The position numbers were made by a program, and so were the translations under genes. A model generated the notes under the pieces. That model searched no databases, was not told the DNA's origin, and worked only from the letters and a program-made list of their open reading frames with translations. From Macrostomum lignano (lineage: Eukaryota): a stretch of DNA of 64,000 nt. Each line of letters starts with the position of its first letter. The stretch's first letter is position 1. Location of the stretch: NCBI GenBank assembly GCA_002269645.1, contig NIVC01001491.1:62001-126000 (forward strand). Direction: 5' to 3'. Shown in pieces: positions 1 to 63,844 of this stretch.

Positions 1-895
1 CACGGCTCTTAATCCTCACTGCTCTTAATCCTCACGGCTCTTAATCCTCACGGCTCTTAATCCCTAATCCTCCTTAATCCCCACGGCTCTTAATCCTCAT
101 ATTTTCTTAATCCTCATGGTTCTTAATCCTCACTGCTCTTAATCCTCACGGCTCTTAATCCCTAATCCTCCTTAATCCTCACGGCTCCTAATCCCTAATC
201 CTCCTGAATCCTCACGGCTTCTAATCCCTAATCCTCCTTAATCCTCACGGCTCCTAATCCTCACGGCTCTTAATCCTCTCGGCTCTTAATCCTCACGGCT
301 CTTAATCCCCAATCCTCCTTAATCCTCACGGCTCCTAATCCCTAATCCTCCTGAATCCTCACGGCTCCTAATCCTCACGGCTCCTAATCCTCTCGGCTCT
401 TAATCCTTACGGCTCTTAATCCTCACGGCTCTTAATCCCTAATCCTCCTTAATCCTCACGGCTCTTAATCCCTACCCTAACCTCCTTAATCCTCACGGCT
501 CTTAATCCTCTCGGCTCTTAATCCTCACGGCTCTTAATCCCTAATCCTCCTTAATCCTCACGGCTCCTAATCCCTAATCCTCCTGAATCCTCACGGCTCC
601 TAATCCTCACGGCTCCTAATCCTCTCGGCTCTTAATCCTTACGGCTCTTAATCCTCACGGCTCTTAATCCCTAATCCTCCTTAATCCTCACGGCTCTTAA
701 TCCCTAACCTCCTTAATCCTCACGGCTCTTAATCCCTAATCCTCCTTAATCCTCACGGCTCCTAATACCTAATCCTCCTGAATCCTCACGGCTCTTAATC
801 CCTAATCCTCCTTAATCCTCACGGCTCCTAATCCCTAATCCTCCTGAATCCTCACGGCTCCTAATCCTCAGGGCTCTTAATACTTTCCCTAATCC
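1..895. repeat. Intronic minisatellite of ~16-17-nt units (CACGGCTCTTAATCCT and AATCCCTAATCCTCCTT variants)
   Basis: Direct tandem repetition visible throughout; ends about 20 nt before the CCCAG acceptor at 914. Confidence 0.95.
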
Positions 896-914
896 TCACC
901 ACCCATAATCCCAG

Positions 915-2470
915 ATCGAGTTCGGTTGCTGCGAAGCAGCAGAGTTCGCCCGGCAGTTGCTCAGGGGCAGCATAGTGCAGCTGGAGCTGCTGTTCGCACA
1001 GCCGGCCGCTCGGCTGTTCGTGTCGCCCGCCTTCGACTGGCTGCTGCAGCGGCGGATGCGTCTGGCCACGGAGAACTTCATCAGGCAGCTGCTGGGACTG
1101 GCGAGTCAGCTGGTCAGGACGCTGAGCAAAGCGGAGGTGCTTGGCAAGAGTTTAAACTTGGTGAATTAGAGTTTGCAGCTTAGTGAATTAGAGTTTACAG
1201 CTTAGTGAATTAGAGTTTACAGCTTAGTGAATTAGAGTTTACAGCTTAGGGAACTAGAGTTTGGAGCTTAGTGAATTAGAGTTTACAGCTTAGGGAACTA
1301 GAGTTTGGAGCTTAGAGAATTAGAGTTTGGAGCTTAGTGAATTAGAGTTTACAGCTTAGGGAATTAGAATTTGGAGCTTAGTGAATTAGAGTTTAGAGCT
1401 TAGTGAATTAGAATTTGGAGCTTAGTGAATTAGAGTTTAGAGCTTAGGGAATTAGAATTTGGAGCTTAGTGAATTAAGAGTTTTTAGCTTAGGGAATTAG
1501 AGTTTAGAGCTAAGTGCATTAGAGTTTACAGTTTAGTGAATTAGAATTTAGCTTGTACTGTTGACGTTGCAATCTCCACCCATCGCAGGTCAACCCAGAC
1601 CAGTTCCCACCAGCTGAGGCCCGCAAGGTGGGCAAGGCTGCCTACCAGCTTGAGCACAAACTCAACCTTCTGACTGACCTGGCCGCGGGCATCGAACCCC
1701 GAGTCACCCTGGAGGGTGCCGAGCGCGAGCGAGTGCTGGCTCTGAGATCAGCTGACTGGGCCGACCCTGCCAGCAGGCGGGCACTGGCTCGGGCCTCACT
1801 CGACAGGTAAGACGTTTTAAAGCTCTTTATGTGAGGCTGTTTGACCTTCTAATGTATCCTAGTGCACTGGGACCTTGAAATGTCACCTGATTGAAATTGC
1901 AACCTTCAGGTGTTAACAGATTTAAAAAGGACCTTCAAATACTTTAAATTATCGCCTCTTGGAGACAATGGTCCTTCAAATATCACCTGGTAGAGAATAT
2001 AAGCTTAGTGTCTCTTGGTTAAAATTTAGACATTCAAATGTTACGTGGTTAAAGCTTTGACCTTCAAATGTCACTTCGTTAAAGTTTTGACCTTCAAATG
2101 TCACTTCGTTAAAGTTTTGACCTTCAAATGTCACTTGGTGGAGAATATGACCTATGCTTAGGACCATATCACACGTACCTGATGTCATCTGATTAAAGCA
2201 GTGACCTTCAAATCTCACCTGGTTAAAACTAGCACCAGGTAGTCATCAGGTAGTGACTTTAACCTTCATATGTCACCCAGTAGAATCTCTCCTGTGACTT
2301 TTAAACTAGTTTTTCAACCTTCAAAAACGTTCTATCCCAGGCACAGAGCAGTTAAACAAACTCTGGCATCGCGAAGCAGCCGGCTGGCTGAGAACTGCCC
2401 GACAGATTTTCTCACCGACTGGCTGCAAGTTGTGCACTTTGGGAGCCACATCTCCGAGGCTGAGTCTTGA
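915..2470 (+). CDS. 3' part (189 aa in window) of an RlaP/PF10127-like Pol-beta-superfamily nucleotidyltransferase; exons 915-1136, 1589-1806, 2341-2470; 5' exons lie upstream of the window
   Basis: AG/GT boundaries with matching phases (0, 2); an alternative in-frame donor exists at 1161. Product IEFGCCEAAEFARQLLRGSIVQLELLF...SPAFDWLLQRR...LLGLASQL / KAAYQLEHKLNLLTDLAAGIEPRVTLEGAERERVLALR / SSRLAENCPTDFLTDWLQ follows the remembered PF10127 motif order (F-x-x-x-L-L-x-G...LE-x-L; Y/L-x-G-x-A; K-x-x-Y/H...; S-x-L-P...L-x-x-W-L). Family call is from memory, not a search. Confidence 0.7.
1165..1545. repeat. Intronic 22-nt minisatellite TTAGTGAATTAGAGTTTACAGC
   Basis: Tandem copies fill intron 1137-1588. 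Confidence 0.92.
1868..2325. repeat. Degenerate ~30-nt intronic repeat with core GACCTTCAAATGTCAC
   Basis: Core recurs across intron 1807-2340, with near-exact 30-nt copies around 2060-2130. Confidence 0.75.
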
Positions 2471-2526
2471 TACTCAGTGTAACGTCTGTTAGTCGTACAA
2501 TCATAGTTCCGCTTATATTTATGGCT

Positions 2527-2532
2527 AATAAA
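2527..2532 (+). promoter_or_regulatory. Probable polyadenylation signal of the RlaP-like gene
   Basis: AATAAA 57 nt after the TGA stop at 2470. Confidence 0.55.
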
Positions 2533-2714
2533 CACTTATTCAATTGTGATAAATATGAATAAAATTATGTTTATGATTGTATTTATACGCTCGCATTTTA
2601 TAATTTATAATAAAAAGATTTGCTTTCATGATCAATTCTGCTGTGATAAATTTTTTAGATTTCACCAACCCAAATCCCCATTATACTCGTACCTTCGATC
2701 CCTAAGACCCTCAA

Positions 2715-3290
2715 TCCCACCACCCCTAATCCCCACCTCCCCTGATCCCCACCACCCCTAATCCACACCACCCCTAATCCACACCACCCCTAATCCACAC
2801 CACCCCTAATCCACACCACCCCTAATCCCCACCACCCCTAATCCCCACCCCTGATCCCCGCCACCCCTAATCCCCACCACCCCTAATCCACACCACCCCT
2901 GATCCCCACCACCCCTAATCCCCACCACCCCTAATCCCCACCACCCCTAATCCACACCACCCCTGATCCCACCACCCCTAATCCCCACCACCCCTAATCC
3001 CCACCACCCCTAATCCACACCACCCCTAATCCACACCACCCCTAATCCACACCACCCTAATCCACACCACCCCTAATCCCACCACCCCTAATCCCCACCA
3101 CCCCTGATCCCCACCACCCCTAATCCCCACCACCCCTAATCCCCACCACCCCTAATCCCTACCACCCTAATCCCCACCACCCCTAATCCCAACCACCCTA
3201 ATTCCCACCACCCCTAATCCCCACCACCCCTAATCCCAACCACCCTAATCCCCACCACCCCAATCCCACCACCCTTAATCCCCACAACCG
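2715..3290. repeat. C-rich 16-nt minisatellite CCCCTAATCC(C/A)CACCA
   Basis: Tandem units, most containing CCCTAA (some CCCTGA); G-rich, G4-capable on the - strand. Confidence 0.95.
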
Positions 3291-4596
3291 CTAATCAGCA
3301 CCATTTTAAATCGTCATTACGGTATAATGGTAATCAAATTTTAAAAGTAATAAATATTAAAAGCAATGCTAATGTATTTACACTATTCAACTATTCCCAA
3401 TGAGAATATAAAATTCAATTTTAACAAAATGAGCTAAAATCGAACAATCATTTCGAGCTGCAATGTTTTAATTATGTACGATTTAGTTCAAAGTTTTATT
3501 TTACTTAAACATTTGAGCAAAGCAAACAAGCGAAAGAGAAAAAATAAGCATTTAAGGTTAAGATAGGGTGATTTTTGTGATAGTGAAGAGCTGCTAAACT
3601 TTTCTACTTTAAGTAGCATATTGAAGATATTAAGAAGTTTAAACAAGCTGCATATATGAAATAACTAGTTGTACATGCAGTTGTTTAGTTGGTAGCCTTT
3701 TTTACTTAAAATTTGGCGTAAATCTGTTTACCTGCTTATAAATTAGTTTTGTGTCCGCTTAATTAGCATGACAAATAAATATTATAAGGCGCTAGAGATG
3801 CCAGTACTGCGTTAGTAGCAATGGAAACAAAGGTGATTAGCATTGACAGAATACCTAAAGTAACAATTTTCTCCGTCCTCGAAAGAAAATTTACATTGAA
3901 AATAAAAAGATATCTATAGTTCTACTTTTCGAGGACAGCACGGCAGTTTGAAATCGCGCGAAAAATCGGTTAAGAGAAAATCGATTTATTAAAACAAAAA
4001 GAGGTTACTTACTGAGGTAACCTTTTCGAAATTACGAAGTAGAAATTCACAGACTGACTTCCGTCTTTAATTCGCGTTTCTCTGGCGCCAAAAGAAGCAA
4101 AAAATATAAAAATTTCGAAATCGAAATCGAAAAAAAGAGAAACACGGAAAGTTGAAAAAGACTTTCTATCGCTTCTGTTCAATTTGCGTTACTGTAAGTA
4201 GAGTGGGCTGACCATGCGAGCGCGTATTTTGCAAAGCGGTAAAAGCTGCTAAATATACATTAGAAAGCAGTAAATATATCTGATACATATTCGTATGTAT
4301 TGGATGCATTGCTTTGTTTGAGTGACTGAGTCTCCCTATTTCAGCTCACTTGGACATTCCTGTGGTTGAAATTAAACAGTGTCCGGAAACTTTTGCAACA
4401 CCCCTCGCATTAGCGCAATGCGGAAAAAAGCAATTAAATATGGAATGACGATTTTATTGGATCCTCAAGTACCTTTGCTAGACCGTTTCTAGGTGAGCTA
4501 TAGCTGTGTTTCAAAATTGAAAATGTTTTGCAAACTAACAATGCGTGACTAGCCATCATTTCTTGGAATGCGAGACGCAACATACACTTTAAAAGG

Positions 4597-7500
4597 CTAC
4601 AAATCTGTGGTCAGATCTCTTCCACGAGAAGCCGCTTGAGTAGTGTGAGTATCGGTTGGCTTCTTGTCCAGCATCCAGCCTCCATTGTCGATGGTTGCCG
4701 GGCCAACCAGGCATTGAAATCGCAGGCCGGTGTTGCCGTCCACCGGCTGAATCGTCTCTGCCGGGAACTCCATGCCGCTATTGGCGAATTCCTGGGCGGA
4801 GGCGAACAGTTTCGGATGATGATGCCGAAGGCTGACACCGCGACGCGTCAGGTCGCGTTGCAACGCTGTCAGATTATTTCGTCGTCTAGCCCGACGCTTC
4901 TCCTGCTCCAGCTCGTTGCTCGACGTTGTCGCCGCGTCGTCGACGCACCGGACGACAGTCCAGCAGCGAAGCAGCGGGCCGCCATCGTCACCAGTGTTGC
5001 GCGTCTGCGGGTAGCTGCTCGCCAGCGGGAGGGCGGCGCAGAGAACGAAAGTCGAACCTTGCATCGACGAGCTGCGGTCGGCTTCGGCAACGGTAGCTAC
5101 GGATGCGTCAGGGTCCGCCGCTGCAGCCGGGTCGCTCCACGGCAGGAAGGTTGGCGGACGCAGCAGGGTCGGGATGTTGCTGTTGCTGCTGCTATTGTTG
5201 GACATGAAGACTCCGGATAGGACTAACTGGACGCAGCCGCCGCTGTCTGCAGAGACGTTCGAAGCTCCTCGCTTAGCCAGTCGAGCCAGTGGCGGCCCGG
5301 CTCGACACGCTGCTCGTCTCAGAGCCGACCGGCAGGCGGCCAGTTGGCGGTCGAAAGCGCAGACGCGACTGTGCGCTGCCCAGTGCGCTCGACGGCAAGG
5401 GTCTGAGCAGTAGCCAACTGTGGCGCAGTTGGGGCAACCGCAGGGACAGCCGCCGTCGCCGCCACTGACGCGACTGCATCGCGGGTTGCAGCAGCGCCCA
5501 ATAGCCGACGGAGCTGCTGGCAAAGCTAGCGAATCTGTTGGCTGAGTCTCCGACTTCCGCGCCGACTTCTTGGCGATGCAGAACAGGGCAGCTGCTTCGT
5601 CCGCCGTTCGAGACTCGTCGTTGGAAAGTTGCGCGTTTCTACGATCGATCGACTGCAGCAGCGTTCGAGTCTCGGACATCCGGGTCAGACCGGCTTCGTA
5701 GCTCGGCGCCTCGGCGGGACCTTCAGCTAGGAATTTAACGGCTGCTTGTTCTTCTGACTGATGATTTTTCTGGTCTACGGCGTCTTTCAATCCGGTGGCG
5801 TGGACTGCGAGCGAAGCTGACCTCGTTGGTGGTGGCGGAGGCGGCGGCTTGCTGGGCGTCGATAAGGTTACTTGATTCGGCTGCGGCTTCGATGAAAAGT
5901 CACTTGGTCGCAGAGTCAAGTTCAGCAGCGGAGGCGGTGGCGGCTGCGGCCGTAGTTGATCTGTTTTACTGACGTTTCCGTCAGGTGTTCGGCTGTCTAA
6001 GCTGCTCTGTTTGATGTAGCGCCTCAGCTGCGAGCCGCTCTCAGTCGACTGGTGTTTCTTGGGTTGCACCAGCTGTTGCGGCTCGGCTTGTAGACGGTTT
6101 GTCATCCCGGCTGGCAGGCTGACAAACTTTGGCATGATGAGCACCGCCCTTGACACCTGATTGGTTGCGGCCGAATCGGACATCGTTGGGGTTGCTGACG
6201 TCACAGACGAAGCCGCTGATGCTGTTGCCACCGCTGCGGCCGCTTCTGACTGAACTTTTCGTCGCCATGGATGTTGCTGTCTCTCGCCAGGTTGCTTCTG
6301 GCTGTCCCAGCATGCCGCTACCGACTGCGGCCGTCCACTGTCGCCGTCATCGCCCAATGGCAAACTGTCAATCCAGTCGGGTAGGTCAAGGCGCGACAAG
6401 GATCTGTGTGCATGACAACGGGAGAGTTTGAAATAATCATGCCTAATCCCGATCCCTGATCCCGATCCCTGATCCCGATCCCTGATCCCGATCCCTGATC
6501 CCGATCCCTGATCCCGATCCCTGATCCCGATCCCTGATCCCGATCCCTGATCCCGATCCCTGATCCCGATCCCTGATCCCGATCCCTGATCCCGATCCCT
6601 GATCCCGATCCCTGATCCCGATCCCTGATCCCGATCCCTGATCCCGATCCCTGATCCCGATCCCTGATCCCGATCCCTGATCCCGATCCCTGATCCCGAT
6701 CCCTGATCCCGATCCCTGATCCCGATCCCTGATCCCGATCCCTGATCCCGATCCCTGATCCCGATCCCTGATCCCGATCCCTGATCCCGATCCCTGATCC
6801 CGATCCCTGATCCCGATCCCTGATCCCGATCCCTGATCCCGATCCCTGATCCCGATCCCTGATCCCGATCCCTGATCCCGATCCCTGATCCCGATCCCTG
6901 ATCCCGATCCCTGATCCCGATCCCTGATCCCGATCCCTGATCCCGATCCCTGATCCCGATCCCTGATCCCGATCCCTGATCCCGATCCCTGATCCCGATC
7001 CCTGATCCCGATCCCTGATCCCGATGACTCACCTACAGATGACCTTCTCGCTCTCAGATTTCGCCTTGGCCTCCAGCCTCTCGATGAAAGTTGGATGGCA
7101 CCTGGTCTGAAGTGCTCGCTTCGACTGCCCCGCTGGCTGCTGCCTCTGCCGGTACCTGCCGCCTCCTTTTCTGCTGCCTCTGTCGGCAAGCAGGTCTTCG
7201 CTGGCCGCCCGACCGACTTCTTCCTGGCTTTCGCCGAGGCCTCCAAGATCGGCCAGGCTGGTGGCGCCTCTACGATTAACCGCACCGATTTCGTCTAAGT
7301 TTGTCTCCGCGAAGGCTTCAACAGCGGCAGCCTCCATCAGGCAACGGTGCAGTTCGTACAGCGACACGGACTTGCCGTCCTCGCCGGGATCTGTCAGCGG
7401 CGAGTCAGTCGGCGATTCGTCGACATCTCTAGCGGCATCCAGATCAGTTGATTTGATTCGGCGGCGCCAAAACTCTCGCCGCTGCGCTACCAGTGTCGGC

Positions 7501-9710
7501 GGTGGCACCGGCGGCGGCGCCGAGCTCTGGCCGGCGAAGATTCGCAAAGCGTCTTCGTCGCTCATCAAGTGTCGCAGCTCGTAGCCGCGGTGACTGTCGG
7601 AGCTCAGAGGCTGCTGATGTACAATGGTCGCTTGAATCGGTGTTAGCAGCGGCTTATCGTCGTCTGGTGATGAGTCGCTGCTGTCCGGAATGAAGGCCGC
7701 CTCCACGGTCAGCGCTGCAATTGGCGGCGCCGCGTCAGTTGTCGCCGCGGCGCTCTCCCTAGCGCTCAACTCCTCCAGCTGACGCTTCAGGCTCAGCAGG
7801 CGCTGCTGATGCAGCATCGACTCTGAAGACAAGGCGTCTGGGCGACTGCTTCTGCACGCCAGAGACGGCAGCGGCGAGGACGGCGGGGGTGGCGGTGGCA
7901 GCAGCGGCTTCAGGGTCGACGGCGGAAACGTCGTTGAAGGCTGCATTATTGACTCGAGGCCGCCGCCGTCGACACCGACGCCGAAGTAGCCCTGAGCTGG
8001 AGTCCTGACTGCTGACGGGCTCACTGTGCACGACGTGGAAACCAGAATGTGCAGCAGCTGCGGTTGCGACGCTACTGTCGCAGTTTCGCTGTTCCGACCA
8101 TCGAATCCGTTGACTTTGCCGCCGCCAACTGTGCGGACGATGCCTACGGCGCTGTTGGCGGCGAGCCCAGCCGCTCTAGCCGTCGCCCTGGCAACGGCGG
8201 CTCCGGCGCTGGCTGCGCTGGCCTCCGACGTGACGACGCCAGGCTGTTCCTCGGTGCAGCTGTTGATACAGGTGCCGTTGTAGTCGGTGACTCTCGCGCT
8301 GGAGGACGCGATGGCTCTGACTGCGCCGGCGAGCTCTGCGGAGGAATCGGCCAGTAATTAATAAACGCATTTTTAAAGGGGCTGGTGCAGTCGAGGTTTT
8401 CATATCGGGCACTATGGATGCCATAAACTTTTGCCGCTCTTAGCTCGTACCTGTCTACGCGCACCTCCTCATTTCAATCGAGCGTTATGTACTTTTTTCT
8501 GCGTCTCTGGATGAAGCGTTTTTTTCATCAATATTTACAAACTAACTCTTTGCAAAGGCAGAGAGCCTTAGCAAACTTGTCTCAATTAAGTCAGTTACTT
8601 TCTTTCTGCTCCAATTATCTCCTAAGTCGAAGGGATTAGGGAGACAGTCACGGGAGAGGATGGCCTACACGAGTGTCATTTGTTCTTAATTAATCGATTG
8701 GCTCGTACTATGGGTCCATTGAGTTCTTACTCAATTCTGTAGCCATAATGTACTTCCGTAGACAGCCATACCTTTAGGGGCTGATGTCTGGATATCCCAA
8801 CCAAATTAAGATTGCTTATTTCATTTCGTTATTGATCATCAAAAAGCGAAGCAAGTTCAAACCTACAGAGACGAAAGACAAAGCGTGTGTACAAGTGCGT
8901 GCCTGCTTATTTTAGCTCGTACTTATCATTAGCGCTAAAACTACGGCAGTTTGATTTACCTTCTGGCCGCCTTTTAGTGTACTGCATGATCGCATTTGAC
9001 TCCTCTGCATTGTTGCTGTCTTCTTCTGGATCGATCACGTCTGACTCTGCCGACTTGCCAGAAGCTGCTGTCAGCAAGCGCAAGCCTGTCTGACACAGAC
9101 TCGGATCCGAGCAGCTGCGGGTCGGGTGCTTCGTCAGCGATGTGCAGCACTCAGTCGGGCTGGAAGCCTCTGCCGCAGCTGCCACCGCCGCCGCCGCCGC
9201 AGCCGCCACAGCGGCCTCCTCAGCGATGGCTCCAAGGCGTCGACAGCCGCTACTTGCGCGGCTTTGTCTGCCATTTCGCAGCAGAATCTGCTGCTGCCGG
9301 TGCTGCTGCTGCAGTCGGCGTCGGGCTTCGCGTCGGACGTCGCGTCGGGCCGTCACAGCCGAGGATGCAGCCGCCGCGGCCGTCTGCGGATGTAAGTCCA
9401 AGAGGTCCAGGTCGTCCTGTGAGAGCACTGGCAGTCGCTGCTTGAAATCGACAGTAAAAGCGTTCACAACCGCGGCTGTCGCAGCTTTTGCCGCTGCAGC
9501 CGCCGGCGCGTCAGCTGGCCACTCCGCGTCGCTGGACTCGCTAGACTCCGATGAAGTCGAGTACTCGATGGCCTCGGCGTCGGGCTCGTGCAGCCAGGGC
9601 CGTCGCAGCCGTTGCCGATGGGCTCTTGGTTGATGTTGCTGCTGCTGCTGCTGCTGAGGCTGTTGCTCCTGCTTCGGGGATACAGCAGATTTAGAGGTCC
9701 CGCTGTAGTT
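4597..9710 (-). CDS. AJM1: AJM1 (C9orf172)-like apical junction protein with MYND-like zinc finger; exons ~9710(or 9668)-8960, 8335-7033, 6403-4597
   Basis: C-terminus has CCNPRC...CPNCATVGYCSDPCRRAHWAAHSRVC and QRDLTRRGVSLRHHHPKLFASAQEFANSGMEFPAETIQPVDGNTGLRFQCLV, matching the remembered AJM1 C-terminal domain (QRELRLRGVFLRHEFP...IYPTDRRTGRPFMC). Donors AAG/GTAAAT (8959) and TAG/GTGAGT (7032); acceptors CCGCAG (8336) and CACACAG (6404); phases 1 and 2 match. The 5' boundary is uncertain. Confidence 0.82.
6446..7025. repeat. Homogeneous 13-nt minisatellite GATCCCGATCCCT (~45 copies) filling AJM1 intron 7032-6404
   Basis: Essentially invariant tandem copies; source of the spurious GSGSGIGIRDRDQ ORF translations. 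Confidence 0.97.
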
Positions 9711-17808: not shown

Positions 17809-17984
17809 TGTCAATTTTGCTTTCATTGAATAGTCATTTTAAAACTGTTTCCAATTAAAAGTACATTTAAATTCTATTTTTAGGCAAAGATAAATGTTTT
17901 TTTAGGCACACATTTTTACTAGCAATCGGGGCGCCCAAAAAGCAATTAGGGACTAAAATTATTTATGTGAATCCTACTTGCCTT

Positions 17985-18708
17985 GACATCTCAGCAATTC
18001 CCCCATTAACCCTTGACCGTACCATTGAAATCTTATCAATTCCCCCAAAAATCCTTGACATCTCAGTAGTTCCCCCAGTAAGCCTTGACATATCAGCAAT
18101 TCCCCCAGTAAGCCTTGAAATCAAAGCAATTCCTCCAGTAAGCCTTGACATCAAAGCAATTCCCCCAGTAAGCCTTGACATCAAAGCAATTCCCCCAGTA
18201 AGCCTTGACATCAAAGCAATTCCTCCAGTAAGCCTTGACATCAAAGCAATTCCTCCAGTAAGCCTTGAACTCAAAGCAATTCCTCCAGTAAGCCTTGACA
18301 TCAAAGCAATTCCTCCAGTAAGCCTTGACATCAAAGCAATTTCTCCAGTAAGCCTTGACATCAAAGCAATTTCTCCAGTAAGCCTTGACATCAAAGCAAT
18401 TCCCCCAGTAAGCCTTGACATCAAAGCAATTCCTCCAGTAAGCCTTGACGTCAAAGTAATTCCCCCAGTAAGCCTTGACATCAAAGCAATTCCTCCAGTA
18501 AGCCTTGACGTCAAAGTTCCTCCAGTAAGCCTTGACGTCAAAGTAATCCCTCCAGTAAGACTTTACATCAAAGCAATTCCCCTAGTAAGCCTTGACATCA
18601 AAGTAATTCCCCCAGTAAGCCTTGACATCAAAGCAATTCCCCCAGTAAGCCTTGACATCAAAGTAATTCCCCCAGTAAGCCTTGACATCAAAGCAATTCC
18701 CCCAGTAA
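17985..18708. repeat. 30-nt minisatellite AGTAAGCCTTGACATCAAAGCAATTCC(T/C)CC
   Basis: Tandem copies; explains the PPVSLDIKAI and SRLTGGIALM ORFs on both strands. Confidence 0.95.
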
Positions 18709-19484
18709 TTATTCAATTATATCTAGCAAATAAAACTCCAGTCAATATGCTATGCAGTAAGCTCTAGAGCCGGCACAACAGACAGGTGAATTATTTATTA
18801 ACAAAGTTAATCGAAGTGCTTCTACTATTGTAGCCTTCCGTGCACTGTGGTAAACCGCAACTTTGATGCGATTTAATTTCGACTCTCAAATCAGTCCCCT
18901 ATAAGACATCAGAACTTCTTACTATCGGAAGACGGCGGCACAAGACTGACGCCATCAGCCAACTCCCAGCGGTGCAGTCAGTTGAGGCGCGCATATCATT
19001 AATTATTTATGAGGCTCTGAAAAAATCTGAATCCCTCTGTGAGACTTGCAACGAAATAATTCAAGAAGGCAGTCAATTAGAGTCGTCAGGAACATAAGTC
19101 CCAAAGGGCGAAGTACCGATCTCGCACGCATGCAATTTTCTATTTTTGCTTTATCATACTACCAAAACTTAAAACCGAAGTAGTAGTATGTTGAGTGTTA
19201 GTATGCCTACGACTGCATGATTTAAAAATATAATTTTTCACTTTGTTCTTATCGAGTCTGCCCCAGCCCGTGTCTCGCATGCACAACTCGCTCAAAGCGA
19301 GAGAAAAGTGGTGTTCGTTGATAGCACGTAGGTGGGTCGACCGGCGAATTTTATCGGGTTCAAAGTGCAACACCAAACTGTAATGCTTTAAATACTCTGA
19401 TAGATACTCTGGTCCTGAGTTCAAAACTAGCTGCTAATCATTACGTGAAAGTGTCAACGGAACCTTGCACGTCCATTCGTCGTC

Positions 19485-30384: not shown

Positions 30385-32969
30385 ATGAGCCGTGTACGCC
30401 AGAACTTCCATGAGGACTGCGAGGCCGCCATTAACAAGCAGATCAACATGGAGCTGTATGCCTCGTACACCTACCAGGCGATGCACTTCCATTTCTTGCG
30501 CGAAGATGTTGCCTTGAAGGGTATCGCCGGATTCTTCGGCAAGAGCTCCGAGGAGGAGCGAGAGCACGCCGAGAAGCTGATGAAGTACCAGAACATGCGC
30601 GGCGGCACCATTGTCTTGCAAGATGTACAGAAGCCCGCCAAGCAGACCTGGGGCTCAATGCTAGAAGCTATTCAGGATGCTCTGGAGCTTGAGAAAGTTG
30701 TCAATCAGGTGAGCTTCAGTGTATAGCAGGCCTTTTTAAGCCTTTTAAATAAAATTAGGCTCTATCATCAGGCCTAACTGCCTAACACTACTAGGCCTAC
30801 AGGAATTTTTAATTGACCTATAACTATAAGATAAGTATAATTTGCTTTGTAGAATGTATACTTTAATATTATTTATAACAAACAAAATAACATAATGTAG
30901 AAAATAGGGACTAATTCACTTTTTAATTAAACAGTTTCATTTTATTTAAGATTTATTCTTTATATATATATTTGTTAAATTAAGTCTAAACGTAATTCAC
31001 ATAAAAAGAAAAGGGTAAGGCCTAGCCTAATGCAATGAAATTGAAATAAACCAAGGCCAAGGCCCAAGCAAGGCAAGGGAATACTAAATATATATAATAA
31101 GTTTTATTAAAAATCAAAAATATGTATGGCACAATTCCTTGGTTAAAACCAAAGTAAATTTATTTCTTTAATGCTTTTCAAATAACTGCACCTTAATGGT
31201 CTATGCTTATATAGTTATTAATTTAGTAAGAAATCATTTTGCAATTTTGCCAATTTTCTATAGATATAAAATTTAATTCGTTATAAAAATGCAATTTAGA
31301 TTAGGCCCCCTAGTCTAATTGCAGCCTAGTTTAGTCTAGTAGCCTTTTCTATAGGCCTTTTTAAACCTTTAGTTTTATCATTACTATTATATAATATTAT
31401 ATTTTTTATTACTAAAAATGGTTATCATTTTATTTTTAGTCATATATATTTTCACTATACTATAATAGAAATTCTAGTATGATTTAAAATGTTATTCTTT
31501 TAGAAATTTTGAAAAATAGTTGTGACATTTCTACTAGATTGTTTTTAATTAAATTAGAATTCCTTTTATCCATTGCTTATTTATAGCTAGGCTTACATAT
31601 TTAAGTTTTTTATAGTAACCTATTACTCAAGAGATATAGGCATTTTGGTCCTTTTGATAATTTAGTCTTTGCCACCCCTGATCCTTCAGACACCACCCTC
31701 CTTGATCCTTTAGACAGTATCTTCCCTGATCCTTTAAGCACCACCCTCCTTAATCCTTCAGACAGCGCCCTCCCTGATTCTTCAGACAGCACCCCTGATC
31801 CTTCAGACAGCACCCCTGATCCTTCAGACAGCACCCTCCCTGATCCTTCAGACAGCACCCCTGATCCTTCAGACAGCACCCCTGATCCTTCAGACAGCAC
31901 CCCTGATCCTTCAGACAGCACCCCTGATCCTTCAGACAGCACCCCTGATCCTTCAGACAGCACCCCTGATCCTTCAGACAGCACCCCTGATCCTTCAGAC
32001 AGCACCCTCCCTGATCCTTCAGACACCACCCTCCCTGATCCTTTAGACAGTATCTTCCCTGATCCTTCAAGCACCACCCTCCTTGATCCTTCAGACAGCA
32101 CCCTCCCTGATTCTTCAGACAGCACCCCTGATCCTTCAGACAGCACCCCTGATCTTTCAGACACCACCCTCCCTGATCTTTCAGACACCACCCTCCCTGA
32201 TCTTTCAGACACCACCCTCCCTGATCTTTCAGACACCACCCTCCCTGATCTTTCAGACACCACCCTCCCTGATCTTTCAGACGCCACCCTCCCTGATTCT
32301 TCAGACACCACCCTCCCTGATCTTTCAGACACCACCCTCCCTGATCTTTCAGACACCACCCTCCCTGATCTTTCAGACGCCACCCTCCCTGATTCTTCAG
32401 ACACCACCCTCCCTGATCTTTCAGACACCACCCTCCCTGATCTTTCAGACACCACCCTCCCTGATCTTTCAGACACCACCCTCCCTGATCTTTCAGACAC
32501 CACCCTCCCTGATCTTTCAGACACCACCCTCCCTGATCTTTCAGACGCCACCCTCCCTGATTCTTCAGACACCACCCTCCCTGATCTTTCAGACACCACC
32601 CTCCCTGATCTTTCAGACACCACCCTCCCTGATCTTTCAGACACCACCCTCCCTGATCTTTCAGACACCACCCTCCCTGATCTTTCAGACACCACCCTCC
32701 CTGATCTTTCAGACACCACCCTCCCTGATTCTTCAGACACTAAAACCTATTCGCCCACCTCCCCACCCCACCAGAGCCTGCTGGATCTGCAGAAACTCGC
32801 TGACAATCGCGGCGACCCCCAGCTGTGCGATTTTATCGAAGGCGAATACCTGAAAGAGCAGGTGGAGTCCATCAAGGAGCTGGCGGATCACGCCACTAAT
32901 TTGAAGCGAGTTGGCTCAGGTCTCGGCGAGTTCATGTACGACAAGGAAGCTTTCGGCGAATCTTCTTGA
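30385..32969 (+). CDS. FTH1: Cytosolic H-type ferritin, 172 aa; exons 30385-30708 and 32775-32969
   Basis: [90 protein letters not shown]; ferroxidase residues present; phase-0 GT-AG intron; no signal peptide. Confidence 0.96.
31670..32740. repeat. Intronic minisatellite with 21-nt (CCCCTGATCCTTCAGACAGCA) and 24-nt (CCCTCCCTGATCTTTCAGACACCA) domains
   Basis: Tandem copies ending ~35 nt before the ferritin exon-2 acceptor. Confidence 0.95.
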
Positions 32970-34089
32970 AAATTCTTGATTGGTGTGCATTGATATTGAC
33001 TTCAGGAGAGACTTCAGGAGCAATTTAGTAGCTATAGAATTCACAGCTGTGTGCAAAAAAATAATCTGTACGAAGTTCTGTTATAATCCCGTTTAATCTT
33101 GTCATTATTTATACAGTAGTTAAGTTGATATAAACCGTTATAATTGTTGTTTAAGTAACTCGATATCATGGATCTTTTCAAGCAATTGATATGTTTAACT
33201 GTATTAGTTATTATATTACTTTGAATAATACTTTTCCGAGCTAAATAAATTGAATAATTTCTGTAGGGCAAGCTTTCCGAATTCCAAAATTATAGTTCTG
33301 CAAAATATAAAATTTTCTAGTTTGTTTGTAGTCTCTTATTTTCTACGATAGTATTGATAGTTGTTGGTGTTGTCTAATCTCTAATCTCCTCTTTCCTTTT
33401 CTTTTCTAATTCCTCTCCTCTTCTCTAATGACGAAAATGATAACTATTTAAATTATATTAAAGTACGATATCATTCAGATTAAAGGATAATGACTTATTT
33501 ATAGTCGTAGTCTATTTCTATAGCAACGCTGATGAAAAACTAATTTGGGCCATCTATTTTAAAAAGTTAATAATTTTCGTTGCTTGCTACTTACATGTAG
33601 AAGTAGACAGTTGAAGTGCTAGGATTTTAAAGGCAGTCAGCCATAATTTTGAAGCGTAGTACTGTGTAATGCATTACTGACAAATGACCCCCCAAGTTCT
33701 TTTTATATTAAAAGCTGTGAGGTAATACAATTTACCAATATGACAGTAGACTGCATGCTTTCTCACATAAGAATGATCTCTCTTAGTATCTCTTGATCAT
33801 GAGGTCTGATATGCAATTTCCGGTTAATCAAGGCACAGTATACATACATATCTGCGTATTCCTGTGAATATTCAAAGGATTAATCTTATGTCGATGTATC
33901 AGCTTAAAGAGCTTGTTTAGAAATTATTTCTCGCGAATGAATATACTAATCCCTCTATATTACAGTGTGTTTCTTATCAAGCATTCTCATTGCATGTATG
34001 TATTACAACTGCATGTATGTACGTGTACATTCTCTGCAAGTTTAATGTAGTTGACGAAGTCTCTCTGTACAATGTACTATAGTCTTTTG

Positions 34090-35320
34090 GTGCCGCGAGA
34101 GGGAAAGGAGATTGGCACCGAGAAGGAATAGAGATTGGCATCGAGAAGGAAGGGAATGGCGCCGAGAAGGAATGGAGATTGACGTCGAGAAGGAATGGAG
34201 ATTGGCACCGAGAAGGAATGGAGATTGGCGCCGGGAAGGAATGTAGATTGGCGTCGAGAAGGAATGGAGATTGGCACCGAGAAGGAATGAATATTGCCGC
34301 CGAGAAGGAATGGAGATTGGCGCCGAGAAGGAATGTAGATTGGCGTCGAGAAGGAATGGAGATTGGCGCCGAGAAGGAATGGATATTGGCGCCGAGAAGG
34401 AATGGAGATTGGCGCCGAGAGGGAATGGAGATTGGCGCCGGGAAGGAATAGGAATGGCGTCGAGAGGGAATGGAGATTGGCGCCGAGAAGGAATGGAGAT
34501 TGGCGCCGAGAAGGAATGGAGATTGGCGCCGAGAGGGAATATAATGGAGATTGGCGCCGGGAAGGAATGGGAATGGCGTCGAGAGGGAATTGAGATTGGC
34601 ACCGAGAAGGAATGGAGATTGGCGCCGAGATGGAATCGAGATTAGCATCGAGAAGGAATGGAGATTGGCGTCGGGAGGGAATGGATATTGGCGCTGAGAG
34701 GGAATGGAGATTGGCGCCGAGAAGGAATTGAGATTGGCGCCGAGAAGGAATGGAGATTGGCGCCGAGAGGAAATGGAGATTGGCGCCGAGAGGGAAAGGA
34801 GATTGGTGCCGAGATGGAATCGAGATTGGCGTCGAGAGGGAATGGAGATTGGCGCTGAGAGGGAATGGAGATTGGCGCCGAGAAGGAATGGAGATTGGCG
34901 CCGAGAAGGAATGGAGATTGGCGCCGAGAGGAAATGGAGATTGGCGCCGAGAAGGAATGGATATTGGCACTGAGAAGGAATAGAGATTGGCATCGAGAAG
35001 GAAGGGAATGGCGCCGAGAAGGAATTGAGATTGGCGCCGAGAGGAAATGTAGATTGGCGCCGAGAAGGAATGGAGATTGGCACCGAGAAGGAATGGAGAT
35101 TGGCGCTGAGAAGGAATTGAGATTGGCGCCGAGAAGGAATGGAGATTGGCGCCGAGAGGAAATGGAGATTGGCGCCGAGAGGGAAAGGAGATTGGTGCCG
35201 AGAAGGAATTGAGATTGGCGCCGAGAAGGAATGGAGATTGGCGCCGACAATGAATGGAGATTGGCGCCGACAATGAATGGAGATTAGCGCCGACAATGAA
35301 TGGAGATTAGCGCCGAGAAG
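34090..35320. repeat. 23-nt minisatellite GAGATTGGCGCCGAGAAGGAATG
   Basis: Degenerate tandem copies; source of many overlapping ORF calls. Confidence 0.95.
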
Positions 35321-35849
35321 ACAGACAGGAGAGCAGTTCGGGCAGAATTTGAATGACGGCTAGGCAGCCTTGAGAAGAATGCCATACACGGTTCAGGTGC
35401 CAGTTCCATACCTAGAGTCTGCGTGCTTCCTAATTTTGCCAAGATCGTTCAACTTCAGCTATCGTGACTCTGACCCTGAATTCACCAGTCAGCTCATCTC
35501 ACCACCCAGACCTTTTGCCCCTCAATCTTCTAAGGTTTTTTTATATTCTCAAAATCGCAAAGCAGCAAGACGACCCAGAGAGGTTCAAGCAAAGACCAGG
35601 AAGAGGCTAAAGATTGCATTGTTGAGTTGCTTTTAGCTCACGGGCTGATGGAGCGCAGAGGAGACTGCAAGCTTCCGGTGAGGCCGTTCTTCCACTCTGG
35701 TAGCTATTATATAAAAATATTACGGGCCCGACCCGTTGCAGTGAGGAAGTCAGGGGGACAAAAGTTGATTCCATGCAGGCTTCTTCCAGAAAATTAATTC
35801 TCTGCGTGCCACGGGATGGTAGAAGCCACGGCTTTTGGCTTTTGTATAG

Positions 35850-36605
35850 CATTCCTCACCCAGAATCCCCAATCTTCCCCATCCAGAATCCTCAATTTTC
35901 CCCACCCAGAGGCCTCAATCTCCCCACACAGAATCGTCAATCTTCCCCATCCAGAATCCTCAATCTTCCCCATCCAGAATCCTCAATCTTCCCCATCCAG
36001 AATCCTCAATCTTCTTCATCCAGAATCCTCAATCTTCTTCATCCAGAACCCTTAATCTTCCCCATCCAGAATACCCAATCTTCCCCATCCAGAACACCCA
36101 ATCTTACGCATCCAGAACACCCAATCTTACGCATCCAGAATACCCAATCTTCCCCATCCAGAATACCCAATCTTCCCATCCAGAATACCCAATCTTCCCA
36201 TCCAGAATACCCAATCTTCCCCATCCAGAATACCCAATCTTCCCCATCCAGAATCCTCAATCTTCCCCATCCAGAATCCTCAATCTTCCCCATCCAGAAT
36301 CCTCAATCTTCCCCATCCAGAATCCTCAATCTTCCCCATCCAGAATCCTCAATCTTCCCCACCCAGAATACCCAATCTTCCCCACCCAGAACACCCAATC
36401 TTCCCCATCCAGAACACCCAATCTTCCCCATCCAGAACACCCAATCTTCCCCATCCAGAACACCCAATCTTCCCCATCCAGAACACCCAATCTTCCCATC
36501 CAGAATACCCAATCTTCCCATCCAGAATACCCAATCTTCCCCATCCAGAATACCCAATCTTCCCCATCCAGAATACCCAATCTTCCCCATCCAGAATCCT
36601 CCAAT
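35850..36605. repeat. 22-23-nt minisatellite CCCAATCTTCCCCATCCAGAATA
   Basis: Tandem copies. Confidence 0.94.
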
Positions 36606-37153
36606 CTGATAGCAAATGTAGCTATTTACTTGAGTCTGTACAAACACAGACATTTTTGTCCATAAATTTATATGCCAAGGACCACTAGGAACACTTCGTT
36701 ATAGTCAAGTCTAGTAGTCCTTGGTATATGCATAGCGATGGTGTCCAGTCGCACAATGCAGTGATCAAATATAGTATCTAGTATTTGTTTATGAGAGTAT
36801 CGAGCTCAGCACTGAAGATTGCCTGTTTTCTAAAATATCTCTATGCTCAATGTCTGCAGGGAGTTCGGCTGCTGCTCGGGTATCCAAGTCACCTCCAGGT
36901 GTGACCGACCAATCGGCAAGGATAGCAAAATGAGATGATAGATTTCTATTGCCTCTTTTTAATGCAAATAAACCGCTCTGTTTTGTCTGATAATAGTGTC
37001 TGCTGGTCAGCTGGTAGTCTTTTTGGTGTCTTAAATTTACATGGCTATTCCTGTATCATTATAGCAATGCATGTAAAATTATTGATATCGCAGTTGCATA
37101 AACCATTGAACGAAATCATGAGACAGGTGAAACCTGGGATAGAAAAACTCCGC

Positions 37154-37925
37154 GCGGCCCATAAAGCCTCTCTATCCAGCTCTCGGGTCCTTTGAAACTT
37201 CACAATGGCAATGGGGCCCGCTCAGGTTTGTCACACTTCTCAGCTCTCTTCTATCCTCTCTTCTCCTCACTCCTCTCTCCTCTCCTCTCCTCTCTTCTCT
37301 CCTCTCCTCTCCTCTCCTCTCCTCTCCTCTCCTCTCCTCTCCTCTCCTCTCCTCTCCTCTCTTCTCTCCTCTCTTCTCTTCTCTTCTCTCCTCTCCTCTC
37401 CTCTCCTCTCCTCCTCTCCTCTCTCCTCTCCTCTCCTCTCCTCTCCTCTCCTCTCCTCTCCTCTCTTCTCTCCTCTCTTCTCTTCTCTCCTCTCCTCTCC
37501 TCTCCTCTCCTCTCCTCTCCTCCTCTCCTCTCTCCTCTCCTCTCCTCTCTTCTCCTCTCCTCTCTCCTCTCCTCTCTTCTCTCCTCTCTTCTCCTCACTC
37601 CTCTCCCATCTTCTCTCCCCTTTCCACTCTCCTCTCCCATCTTCTTTCCCCTTTCCTATTTTCTCTCGGAAGTCTCATCCCCTCTCTCCTCTCTTCTCTC
37701 CTCTCCTCTCCTCTCCTCTCTTCTCTCCTCTCTTCTCTTCTCTCCTCTCTTCTCTTCTCTCCTCTCCTCTCCTCTCCTCTCCTCTCTTCTCTCCTCTCTT
37801 CTCTTCTCTCCTCTCTCCTCTTCTCTCTCTCTCCTCTACTCCCCTCTCTCCTCTCCTCTCTCCTACCCTCTCTCCTCTCCTCTTTTCTCTCCTCTTTCCT
37901 CCTCTCTCGTCTCTGTTCTCTCTTC
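37154..37925 (+). repeat. Conserved leader followed by a (CTCTC)n-type polypyrimidine tract
   Basis: Leader GCGGCCC...AAGCCTC...TCGGGTCCTTTGAA and CTTCTCAGCTCTCT, also found at 61557-61633; CT tract at 37240-37925. Confidence 0.8.
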
Positions 37926-38647
37926 TTACTCGTAAAAGGGAAAGATGAAAAGGGCGGATCGAACCCTGGGCCCCAGGTTCAATTTCGCGCGCGTCTGTAT
38001 TAATGACCCTTTTCAAATCTGTTTGCTTCTTCAATCAGTAAAAGATTAGAAAAAAACAATCAGATTCTGTGAGGGAATCAAAGGGGAAGGAAGTTACGGA
38101 AAGAGCATTGTTGTGCAGACAAAGGTGGATTCACAGGCCCGAGAAATTCTTGATTGAGCTAAGTGGCCCTGTAAGTCTTGCTTTTTTAACACTTCTTCTG
38201 CAGCACTAGAGATTCAAACCCTTATTTAGCTGACACCATCAATTCAACAGCCTGCAGGTGCCGTGGCTTGCAAAGATTTCTATCAGGAAGTTTTTCTGAA
38301 GCCGAAAGGAAACTTTTAGAGGATTTTTTCACTCTTTTTGTCACCCCGCGCTGCAGTCCTCGCGGTACAGAGGGAGAGAGAGGGGGCCAGAATGCCTTCA
38401 GGGGCCCACGAGCCTCGCTCTTGAGCCTGTCTGACAGCTCAGATCCAAGAGCAAGTGTTTGCTTTTGGTTTGAGTTGATTTTTTTTAACAATCAAGATTA
38501 AGAGGAACTGCGGAGCCAGGCCATGTGCCCTAAAGGAATTTTCTTTCTTGCGACAGGATGCCAACTTTTTAATTTATCATTTCGCTTTATCAACTATAGG
38601 GGTCAGTGCAGGTAGTTAACCTTGGACAACCGGAGTAGAATTACACT

Positions 38648-63558: not shown

Positions 63559-63844
63559 TTGTTGCACTGGAGAAAGAACCTTTATGTCAATGCATAAGAG
63601 CATTGATATGTCTAAGAACTTTCCCACTTGATGTTTTGTAATTTCAACAAACAATATCCTTGCTAATATTTGCGTACTGCATTCAAATAAACACTGCTGA
63701 TCAAAAAGTAATATTTTTATAAACGTATTTTTGGTCGCCAACGACGAGTACACTACGATATCGAAGCCTCAGTTTTTTTAATGCACCAGAAGATTTTGTT
63801 TGACTCAGCGAGTTTCTCAGTCTCGTAGATTTTATGTAGTCACC

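What the first reader, a model, noticed from the sequence alone, without database searches (positions are those of the whole stretch)
915..2470. Intron-containing animal gene for a bacterial/phage-type RlaP-like nucleotidyltransferase
Seen: three GC-rich exons separated by minisatellite-filled GT-AG introns splice in phase into a 189-aa C-terminal region with a stop and an AATAAA. Established: RlaP (RNA ligase-associating Pol-beta; PF10127) proteins are known mainly from bacteria and phages, where they are linked to RNA repair and biological conflict. Inference: the motif order (EFARQLLRGS..LELLF; SPAFDWL..RR; LLGLASQL; KAAYQL; GIEPRV..ERERVLALR; SSRLAE..DFLTDWL) fits that family. Introns carrying host-type repeats argue against bacterial contamination. 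This could be a domesticated RNA end-repair or nucleotide-signalling enzyme uncharacterised in animals. The catalytic GS...DxD motif should be in exons upstream of the window and cannot be seen.
Basis: partly seen in the sequence, partly recalled or inferred. Interest (0 to 1): 0.8.

Follow-up and report, generated by a model that had tools for sequence, protein, structure and literature searches.

The report
Flatworm RlaP-family nucleotidyltransferase gene, last exons
The region holds the last three exons of a real flatworm (Macrostomum lignano) gene for a divergent RlaP-type RNA nucleotidyltransferase, one member of an unstudied protein family that sponges, molluscs, annelids and several protists also carry.

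Summary
Exons 915-1136, 1589-1806 and 2341-2470 have AG/GT borders and splice in phase into 189 aa, with a stop at 2468-2470 and AATAAA at 2527. Both introns contain minisatellites.

The peptide is 100% identical, over all shared residues, to UniProt's Macrostomum lignano "NTP_transf_2 domain-containing protein". That model's upstream exon carries GSRMYGLSTPQSDVDY.

Neither the peptide nor that model hits Pfam directly. The RlaP assignment rests on three other lines:
- The peptide's homologues (E down to 3e-19) are ~610-aa animal and protist proteins that score above the PF10127 (RlaP) threshold.
- A family profile trimmed to the window-encoded columns matches bacterial/T4 RlaP (hhalign 96.7%, E 4e-10).
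- An AlphaFold model of the peptide best matches phage RlaP-like nucleotidyltransferases.

This is not a recent bacterial acquisition. The family is widespread in spiralians and sponges. Mytilus, Lymnaea and the sponge Sycon share four intron positions in the catalytic domain. The flatworm shares none.

Two points remain open. The database model lacks about 31 aa between the DxD motif and the third carboxylate, and no transcript was found.

Verdict: a new, divergent member of a known but barely studied family. Interest is moderate.

The parts
1..914 (+). 3' part of the upstream intron. A 16/33-nt minisatellite covers 1-881, and the acceptor AG is at 913-914.
   Evidence: TRF. 36 copies of CTTAATCCTCACGGCT against 0.04 expected by chance. 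No homologue matches in here apart from one alignment overhang.
915..1136 (+). Coding exon, phase 0 to 0, 74 codons (IEFGCCEAAEFARQLLRGSIVQLELLF...SKAE). It encodes the strand carrying the third catalytic carboxylate (E, GAG 918-920) and the first helices of the helical domain.
   Evidence: tblastn from homologues reaches E 4.6e-11. hhalign places the E opposite the invariant D of the bacterial enzymes.
1105..1613 (+). Alternative GT...AG intron used by the UniProt model P0001 (donor after 1104, acceptor before 1614). It removes 19 aa relative to the 1136/1589 junction.
   Evidence: Every complete homologue in the alignment has residues across this gap. Which junction is used in vivo was not tested.
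1137..1588 (+). Intron (GT...AG, 36% G+C), filled by a 22-nt minisatellite at 1147-1551.
1589..1806 (+). Coding exon, 218 nt (VNPDQFPPAEARKVGKAAYQLEHKLNLL...SLD). It carries the family-invariant K-x-x-Y-x-x-x-H-K motif and the ER..LALR motif.
   Evidence: tblastn from homologues reaches E 3e-7.
1807..2340 (+). Intron (GT...AG, 38% G+C) with a 30-nt repeat at 2009-2139 and degenerate copies from 1870 to 2276.
2341..2470 (+). Last coding exon (its first base completes the split R codon; then HRAVKQTL...SRLAENCPTDFLTDWLQVVHF...). It encodes the C-terminal helix with the conserved W. Stop TGA at 2468-2470.
   Evidence: tblastn E 8e-4.
2471..2563 (+). 3' untranslated region with AATAAA at 2527-2532 and 2558-2563.
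   Evidence: The polyadenylation site itself is inferred.

Best explanation
Window 915-2470 is the 3' end (three coding exons plus 3' UTR) of the Macrostomum lignano member of a eukaryotic branch of the RlaP (PF10127) family of Pol-beta-fold nucleotidyltransferases.

**What the window encodes**
- The beta-strand bearing the third metal-binding carboxylate (E of IEF).
- The whole C-terminal helical domain. In the solved Pseudomonas RlaP this domain forms the other wall of the RNA/NTP cleft, and its last helix packs back onto the catalytic domain.
- The G-S...S-D-x-D part of the active site lies in an exon upstream of the window.

**Inferred function**
By homology with the two characterised bacterial enzymes, the protein would add one or a few NMPs, without a template, to the 3'-OH of damaged RNAs such as nicked tRNAs. 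That would restore nucleotides before religation. This step is inferred and was not shown here.

**Architecture and origin**
- In other animals the protein is about 610 aa. An N-terminal RlaP-like half has lost the catalytic residues, and a C-terminal half has kept them.
- The gene is an old animal gene, not a recent bacterial import.
For: **Identity**
- The only close database hit is the M. lignano protein P0001. It is identical over all shared residues, and its upstream part reads GSRMYGLSTPQSDVDY.

**Family**
- An exhaustive HMMER search found 42 relatives.
- All 16 relatives that matched any Pfam family matched PF10127, 15 of them above the gathering score (Mytilus, Lymnaea, Capitella, Ephydatia, Sycon, Diphylleia, Mastigamoeba and others). 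One 220-aa fragment (P0005) matched nothing.
- Family profile against bacterial/T4 RlaP: 99.2%, E 6e-20. Window-encoded columns only: 96.7%, E 3.6e-10 over 163 columns.
- An HMM of the window region scores T4 NrdC.11 at 22 bits and bacterial RlaPs at 18-28 bits.

**Structure**
- The AlphaFold model of the 189 aa has pLDDT 91 and is all-helical.
- The 13 best BFVD matches are phage proteins, and all four that carry a functional name are called nucleotidyltransferase or "RNA repair pathway protein" (prob 0.97-1.00, TM 0.49-0.67).

**Constraint**
- All 10 strictly invariant columns and 17 of 24 columns conserved at >=90% in the window-encoded part are kept in the flatworm.
- The frame is intact, and third codon positions are 74% G+C.

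**Ancestry**
- About 40 named spiralian and sponge orthologues were found.
- Four phase-0 introns of the catalytic domain are shared by Mytilus, Lymnaea and Sycon, and two more by Lymnaea and Sycon, where the Mytilus mapping has a gap.
- The flatworm groups with molluscs in a neighbour-joining tree.

**Biochemistry of the family**
- PMC12776372.
Against: - The peptide and P0001 alone give no Pfam, NCBIfam or PDB sequence hit. Membership rests on intermediate sequences.
- P0001 lacks about 31 aa that every homologue has between S-D-x-D and the third carboxylate. If that is real and not a missed exon, the core fold could not form and the protein would be inactive.
- No transcript-derived protein for this gene was found in a collection that includes Logan assemblies.
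- All Foldseek E-values are above 1e-3.
- Tree support is weak, at 52%.
- No eukaryotic RlaP has been assayed. The bacterial operon context that suggested RNA repair does not exist in animals.
Confidence: 0.8

Rival explanations
1. The flatworm copy is a catalytically dead or decaying relic. The gene model is correct in joining DVDYLL directly to IEFGCC, so the strand-helix-strand connection of the nucleotidyltransferase core is deleted. The protein is then inactive or not made.
For: - P0001 lacks about 31 aa, including the nearly invariant RG, that all 27 orthologues have.
- No transcript-derived protein was found.
- None of the three flatworm introns is at an ancestral position, so the gene has been heavily remodelled.
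Against: - All 10 invariant and 17 of 24 highly conserved positions encoded in the window are retained, and the 189-codon frame is intact.
- The same database model visibly mis-joins another junction, leaving a 19-aa gap, so a skipped small exon is plausible.
- The upstream intron runs off the window, so the exon cannot be looked for here.
Confidence: 0.15
2. It is a recent horizontal acquisition from a bacterium or phage that later gained introns ("domestication" in the flatworm lineage).
For: - Most of the >10,000 RlaP sequences are bacterial or viral (PMC12776372).
- The flatworm intron positions differ from those of other animals.
Against: - The nearest relatives are animal proteins, not bacterial ones. 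tblastn against 50,697 phage records finds nothing.
- The family is present in sponges and many spiralian phyla, with shared introns.
- The flatworm sits with molluscs in the tree.
Confidence: 0.03
3. It is a nucleotidyltransferase of the Pol-beta superfamily but from a family other than RlaP, for example the kanamycin/lincosamide nucleotidyltransferase type or a signalling oligonucleotide synthase such as Hailong HalB.
For: - The best solved-structure matches of the Mytilus orthologue are ANT(4'), HalB, 3c18 and LinB (prob about 1.0, E about 5e-3, TM 0.4-0.48).
- UniProt names the flatworm protein NTP_transf_2.
Against: - PF10127 is the top Pfam family for every homologue that matched any family. 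PF01909 is weaker or absent.
- The helical domain encoded in the window aligns along its length with RlaP profiles.
- No RlaP structure appears to be in the PDB copy searched, so those PDB hits are simply the nearest available folds.
Confidence: 0.04
4. It is bacterial or other contamination of the assembly, or a chance open frame.
For: None found.
Against: - Three GT-AG introns.
- An animal 3' end signal.
- Flanking animal genes: a MYND-finger protein and a P4 flippase.
- Identity to a M. lignano database protein.
- Significant homologue hits to each exon.
Confidence: 0.01

Closest known systems
Bacterial RlaP (PF10127), e.g. Pseudomonas fluorescens/aeruginosa RlaP in rtcB-rlaP-rtcA operons (PMC12776372)
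   Same: - The same domain plan: a Pol-beta nucleotidyltransferase core with G-S, S-D-x-D and a third carboxylate, then a helical domain ending in a helix that packs back on the core.
- Profile-profile match along the whole domain.
   Different: - Only about 15% identity.
- The eukaryotic proteins have an additional N-terminal degenerate copy of the domain.
- There is no operon and no adjacent RNA ligase.
- The third carboxylate is E, not D.
- The activity of the animal protein is untested.
Phage T4 NrdC.11 and other phage RlaP-type nucleotidyltransferases
   Same: - PF10127 members.
- The window-region HMM scores NrdC.11 at 22 bits.
- The best structural matches of the window-encoded model are phage proteins of this kind.
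   Different: - The phage proteins are single-domain, 230-340 aa, and tied to phage RNA-repair modules.
- No detectable similarity by tblastn.
Spiralian and sponge "uncharacterized protein LOC..." orthologues (e.g. Mytilus californianus XP_052084005.1, Lingula, Owenia, Lineus, Ephydatia, Sycon)
   Same: - About 31-34% identity with the flatworm catalytic domain, with the same invariant residues.
- These are the true orthologues by best hits and by the tree.
   Different: - The flatworm sequence is the most divergent and escapes Pfam.
- It shares none of the conserved intron positions.
- Its database model lacks about 31 aa of the core.
- Its N-terminal half has not been seen.
Two-domain nucleotidyltransferases with solved structures: ANT(4')/kanamycin nucleotidyltransferase, LinB, Hailong HalB
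   Same: A Pol-beta core plus a helical domain. These are the best PDB matches of the Mytilus orthologue model.
   Different: They belong to different families and have different substrates (aminoglycosides, lincosamides, dATP oligomerisation). The matches are weak: E about 5e-3, TM 0.4-0.48.

Membership tests
RlaP (Pfam PF10127) | Homology to bona fide RlaP proteins along the domain, detectable by profile methods | tested here: met
   - hhalign of the family alignment (flatworm sequence as first row) against P0060/P0061/T4 NrdC.11: 99.2%, E 6e-20.
- Window-encoded columns only: 96.7%, E 3.6e-10.
- The three reference proteins were themselves verified as PF10127, at 47-94 bits.
RlaP (Pfam PF10127) | Direct single-sequence match to the Pfam model above its gathering score. 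This is an operational criterion and not a biological one. | tested here: not met
   - No Pfam hit at E<=10 for the 189-aa peptide or for the 269-aa P0001.
- Orthologues and other homologues do pass, at 32-128 bits against a cut-off of 23. One protist homologue (P0009) scored 18 bits, and one fragment (P0005) matched nothing.
- The failure is read as a loss of sensitivity on a divergent, partial sequence.
RlaP (Pfam PF10127) | G-S-x-x-Y-G ... S-D-x-D motif (two catalytic aspartates) | not testable with these tools
   The motif lies upstream of the window. It is present in the database model of the same gene: GSRMYGLSTPQSDVDY. The genomic DNA for it could not be retrieved.
RlaP (Pfam PF10127) | Third catalytic carboxylate on the next strand, at the normal spacing from D-x-D | tested here: inconclusive
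   - The residue is present: E of IEF (918-920) aligns with the invariant D of the bacterial enzymes.
- In P0001 it follows D-x-D after only 4 residues, where homologues have about 35. This is either a missed exon or a deletion.
RlaP (Pfam PF10127) | C-terminal helical domain with a terminal helix that returns to the catalytic domain | tested here: met
   - AlphaFold model with pLDDT 91 and ten helices, including the terminal W-containing helix at 168-180.
- Top BFVD matches are phage RlaP-type proteins, TM 0.49-0.67.
- The description of the PfRlaP structure is in PMC12776372.
RlaP (Pfam PF10127) | Genomic association with an RNA ligase (the basis of the name) | not tested
   - This is an operon criterion for prokaryotes and phages.
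- No ligase was noticed among the long ORFs of the window, but no dedicated search was made.
RlaP (Pfam PF10127) | Addition of 1-2 NMP to RNA 3'-OH | not testable with these tools
   A biochemical property, shown only for two Pseudomonas enzymes (PMC12776372).
Animal/eukaryotic ~610-aa tandem RlaP subfamily | N-terminal degenerate RlaP-like half preceding the active half | not testable with these tools
   - Shown for the orthologues: hhalign of the N-terminal halves against the catalytic-domain profile gives 96.8%, E 2.8e-10. The Mytilus model repeats the secondary-structure pattern.
- The flatworm N-terminus lies outside the window, and P0001 is a fragment.
Animal/eukaryotic ~610-aa tandem RlaP subfamily | Conserved phase-0 intron positions in the catalytic domain | tested here: not met
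   Four positions are shared by Mytilus, Lymnaea and Sycon, and two more by Lymnaea and Sycon. None of the three flatworm introns coincides with any of them. This bears on gene-structure history, not on protein homology.

The most novel reading that the evidence does not exclude
Animals outside the usual model organisms (sponges and spiralians, including this flatworm) keep an ancient two-module enzyme: a dead RlaP-like half fused to a live one. It would act on damaged RNA ends alongside the tRNA ligase RtcB, or make a nucleotide signal, as part of stress or antiviral defence. This would be an RNA-repair or conflict system of bacterial type that ran vertically through early animal evolution, apparently without counterparts in the model animals. 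No vertebrate or ecdysozoan appeared among the relatives whose source could be identified, but this was not tested systematically. The flatworm copy, with its rebuilt intron set and possibly shortened core, might be a derived regulatory pseudo-enzyme.
Probability: 0.25. Interest if true: 0.65.

Novelty: new member of a known kind. Interest (0 to 1): 0.4.

Why it matters
**State of knowledge**
- RlaP enzymes were characterised only in late 2025, in two Pseudomonas species. They are thought to replace nucleotides removed by ribotoxins before RNA religation.
- Eukaryotic members are mentioned in the literature only as "a small number". Every animal orthologue found here is annotated as uncharacterised.

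**What this work adds**
- The flatworm gene belongs to a conserved sponge-to-spiralian orthologue group with a duplicated (dead plus live) domain plan. That gives a concrete entry point for asking whether animals have a template-independent RNA 3'-end repair step.
- Macrostomum lignano is experimentally tractable (my own knowledge: RNAi, in situ hybridisation and transgenesis are established in it), so the question can be tested.

**Limits**
- The gene is already in databases.
- The family is known.
- Nothing here shows activity.

Tried and rejected
**Searches that found nothing useful**
- Direct searches with the peptide or P0001 against Pfam, NCBIfam and PDB sequences: nothing.
- Family profile against PDB sequences: only a marginal minimal-nucleotidyltransferase hit at E 0.23. 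The PfRlaP structure seems not to be in that copy.
- tblastn of the hybrid protein against 50,697 phage genomes: no match.
- Foldseek of the window-encoded model against PDB: only generic helical bundles, nothing significant.
- Retrieval of the upstream exons: no contig on record for P0001, so the missing ~31 aa and the N-terminal half could not be checked.
- Word-index homologue search with the family alignment: only 4 hits because of candidate capping. The exhaustive search and the Mytilus query were the useful ones.
- A hidden exon in 1-914: none, all frames are translated repeat.
- A second copy of the gene in the window: none.
- Rfam scan of the window: no hits.

**Ideas rejected**
- Contamination.
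- A chance ORF.
- Recent horizontal transfer.
- The reasons are given under the rival explanations.
Full report
**1. The observation**

- Segments 915-1136, 1589-1806 and 2341-2470 are each preceded by AG, and the first two are followed by GT.
- Joined, they make 570 nt with one open frame of 189 codons, ending in TGA at 2468-2470. The other two frames are broken by many stops.
- AATAAA follows at 2527 and 2558.
- Exons are 55-66% G+C against 36-38% for the two introns, and third codon positions reach 74% G+C.
- Intron 1 is nearly all a 22-nt minisatellite (1147-1551).
- Intron 2 has a 30-nt repeat (2009-2139, with degenerate copies from 1870 to 2276).
- The sequence upstream of 915 is a 16/33-nt array covering 1-881.
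- These particular repeats occur nowhere else in the window. The window as a whole is full of minisatellites, and most of its long ORFs are translated repeats.

**2. Whose gene it is**

A word-indexed search of 5.8 billion proteins returned a single hit, P0001. This is a 269-aa Macrostomum lignano protein that UniProt calls "NTP_transf_2 domain-containing".
- P0001 is identical to the window peptide at every shared residue, so the window is from that flatworm or a near-identical copy.
- P0001 uses a different GT-AG pair (donor after 1104, acceptor before 1614) and so lacks 19 aa.
- Its upstream part, not in the window, reads ...LELAACAGSRMYGLSTPQSDVDYLL and then joins directly to IEFGCC, the first residues encoded at 915.
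- The DNA for those upstream exons could not be fetched.
- The flanking genes are ordinary animal genes. A MYND-finger protein lies on the minus strand at 4597-8024, and a P4 phospholipid flippase at 53309-56353.

**3. What family it belongs to**

Direct single-sequence searches failed.
- The 189-aa peptide and P0001 give no hit in Pfam, NCBIfam or PDB sequences.

An exhaustive HMMER search of 1.84 billion cluster representatives, using the two-sequence profile, found 42 relatives.
- The best (E 3e-19 to 4e-14) are proteins of about 617 aa in which the match is the C-terminal third.
- Eighteen of these relatives were scanned against Pfam. Sixteen matched a family, and in each case PF10127 (RlaP) was the top hit. 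Fifteen scored above the gathering score, at 32-128 bits against a cut-off of 23. P0009 scored 18 bits, and the fragment P0005 matched nothing.

I aligned 13 catalytic domains with the flatworm sequence (A2). I compared that profile with an alignment of two bacterial-type RlaPs and T4 NrdC.11 (A3), all three verified as PF10127.
- Full domain: hhalign gives 99.2% probability, E 6e-20, over 212 columns.
- Trimmed to the columns encoded in the window, so that the GS/DxD motif cannot drive the result: 96.7%, E 3.6e-10, over 163 columns.
- An HMM of the window region scores T4 NrdC.11 at 22 bits and the bacterial proteins at 18-28 bits.

In these alignments the E of IEF (GAG at 918-920) lies opposite the invariant aspartate of the bacterial enzymes. 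That is the third metal-binding carboxylate. The window therefore encodes one catalytic residue plus the whole helical domain.

**4. Structure**

With an 18-row alignment, AlphaFold models the 189 aa confidently (pLDDT 91.2, pTM 0.87) as ten helices.
- Against solved structures, nothing significant appears.
- Against predicted viral structures, the first 13 matches are all phage proteins. All four with a functional name are called nucleotidyltransferase or "RNA repair pathway protein", which is the Pfam description of PF10127. Probabilities are 0.97-1.00, TM-scores 0.49-0.67 and E-values 3.5e-3 to 0.18.

The full-length Mytilus orthologue also models well (pLDDT 91.6).
- Its best PDB matches are two-domain nucleotidyltransferases: ANT(4'), Hailong HalB, 3c18 and LinB.
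- These matches are weak. They place the protein in the superfamily and do not displace the RlaP assignment.

**5. Which splice form**

Both junction pairs have acceptable GT/AG contexts. Only spliced reads can decide which is used.

**6. Is the flatworm gene intact?**

For:
- Of the 24 alignment columns conserved in at least 90% of 27 orthologues and encoded in the window, the flatworm keeps 17.
- These 17 include all 10 strictly invariant columns. The other seven changes are mostly conservative.

Against:
- Every homologue has about 31 residues between S-D-V-D-Y-x-x-x-Y and the E-Y/F strand, including a nearly invariant R-G. P0001 has none of them. Without them the two catalytic strands cannot be connected normally.
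- A skipped small exon seems more likely, since the same model also mis-joins another junction. A real deletion cannot be excluded, because the relevant intron runs off the window and 1-914 holds only repeat.
- No transcript-derived protein for the gene was in the searched collection.

**7. History**

Named relatives include the following:
- many bivalves and gastropods, and a chiton;
- the brachiopod Lingula;
- the annelids Capitella and Owenia;
- the nemertean Lineus;
- the sponges Ephydatia and Sycon;
- the protists Diphylleia, Platysulcus and Mastigamoeba.

All the animal ones are annotated "uncharacterized".

I mapped exons of the Mytilus, Lymnaea and Sycon genes on their genomic loci.
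- Four phase-0 introns of the catalytic domain are at identical alignment positions in all three species. Two more are shared by Lymnaea and Sycon, where the Mytilus mapping has a gap.
- The gene, with its introns, therefore predates the sponge-bilaterian split.
- None of the three flatworm introns coincides with these positions.

A neighbour-joining tree puts the flatworm with the molluscs, with weak support (52%). No vertebrate or ecdysozoan appeared among the relatives whose source could be identified, but absence was not tested systematically.

**8. Architecture of the family**

The N-terminal halves of ten ~610-aa proteins, aligned, match the catalytic-domain profile at 96.8%, E 2.8e-10, over 194 columns.
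- In the N-terminal half, G-S is replaced by C-P-W and S-D-x-D by A-R-H-N.
- The Mytilus model repeats the same strand/helix order in both halves.
- The animal protein is thus a tandem of an inactivated and an intact RlaP-like module.
- Whether the flatworm has the first module is unknown.

**9. How it most likely works**

*Shown here:*
- Homology to RlaP.
- Retention of the catalytic and invariant residues that could be examined.
- A helical domain of RlaP type.

*From the literature (PMC12776372):*
- RlaP enzymes add one or two NMPs to RNA 3'-OH ends and prefer damaged RNAs.
- RNA and NTP meet in the cleft between the catalytic and helical domains.
- The proposed role is to replace nucleotides removed by "smart" ribotoxins before ligation.

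*Inferred:*
- The animal protein does the same chemistry on RNA ends.
- The dead N-terminal module may serve as an RNA-binding or dimer-mimicking partner.

I put about 0.9 on family membership, about 0.5 on RNA 3'-end extension as the activity, and about 0.15 on the flatworm copy being inactive.

**10. Novelty and verdict**

The gene is already in UniProt, the family is known, and eukaryotic members have been noted in passing (also PMC10400998).

What is new here:
- The explicit assignment of this Pfam-invisible flatworm protein to RlaP.
- The breadth and age of the animal orthologue group.
- The tandem dead/live architecture.
- The complete turnover of intron positions in the flatworm.

Verdict: a new member of a known kind, of moderate interest.

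Noticed in passing
window 4597-8024, minus strand: Neighbouring gene with a MYND zinc finger (PF01753, 23.5 bits). The N-terminal third of its 811-aa ORF is a translated minisatellite (GSGSGIGIRDRDQ repeated about 17 times). A second long ORF, 7029-8024, abuts it.
   Followed up: partly
window 53309-56353, plus strand: A single uninterrupted 1014-aa ORF encoding a P4-type phospholipid flippase (PhoLip_ATPase_N/C and E1-E2 ATPase domains; DKTGTLT motif).
   Followed up: partly
window 17967-18767, 31610-32853, 33977-35296, 35773-36609, 37192-37948, 38641-39480, 62897-63631: Most long ORFs of the window are translated minisatellite arrays, often open on both strands or in several frames. The window is unusually dense in tandem repeats. 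An Rfam scan of the whole window found nothing.
   Followed up: partly
L003 (Mytilus californianus), L004 (Sycon ciliatum), L005 (Lymnaea stagnalis): The RlaP-family gene has at least 10-13 exons in these animals. Four phase-0 intron positions in the catalytic domain are shared by both molluscs and the calcareous sponge, and two more by Lymnaea and Sycon. None of the three flatworm introns is at any of these positions.
   Followed up: yes
P0004 and orthologues (residues about 110-360 of about 617): The N-terminal half of the animal proteins is a degenerate copy of the RlaP domain, with the catalytic motifs replaced (GS to CPW, SDxD to ARHN). Some protist relatives (P0010, P0013, P0021, about 1000-1300 aa) carry additional copies.
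   Followed up: partly
L007 3001-4857: A 618-aa family member (P0007) on a 1.4-Mb contig of an ENA assembly is encoded without any intron, unlike the mollusc and sponge genes. The organism was not identified.
   Followed up: no
window 2708-3303: Just downstream of the gene lies a 16/32-nt array (CCCTAATCCCCACCAC). It shares the CTAATCC core with the array at 1-881 upstream of exon 915. The two flanking arrays may be related.
   Followed up: no
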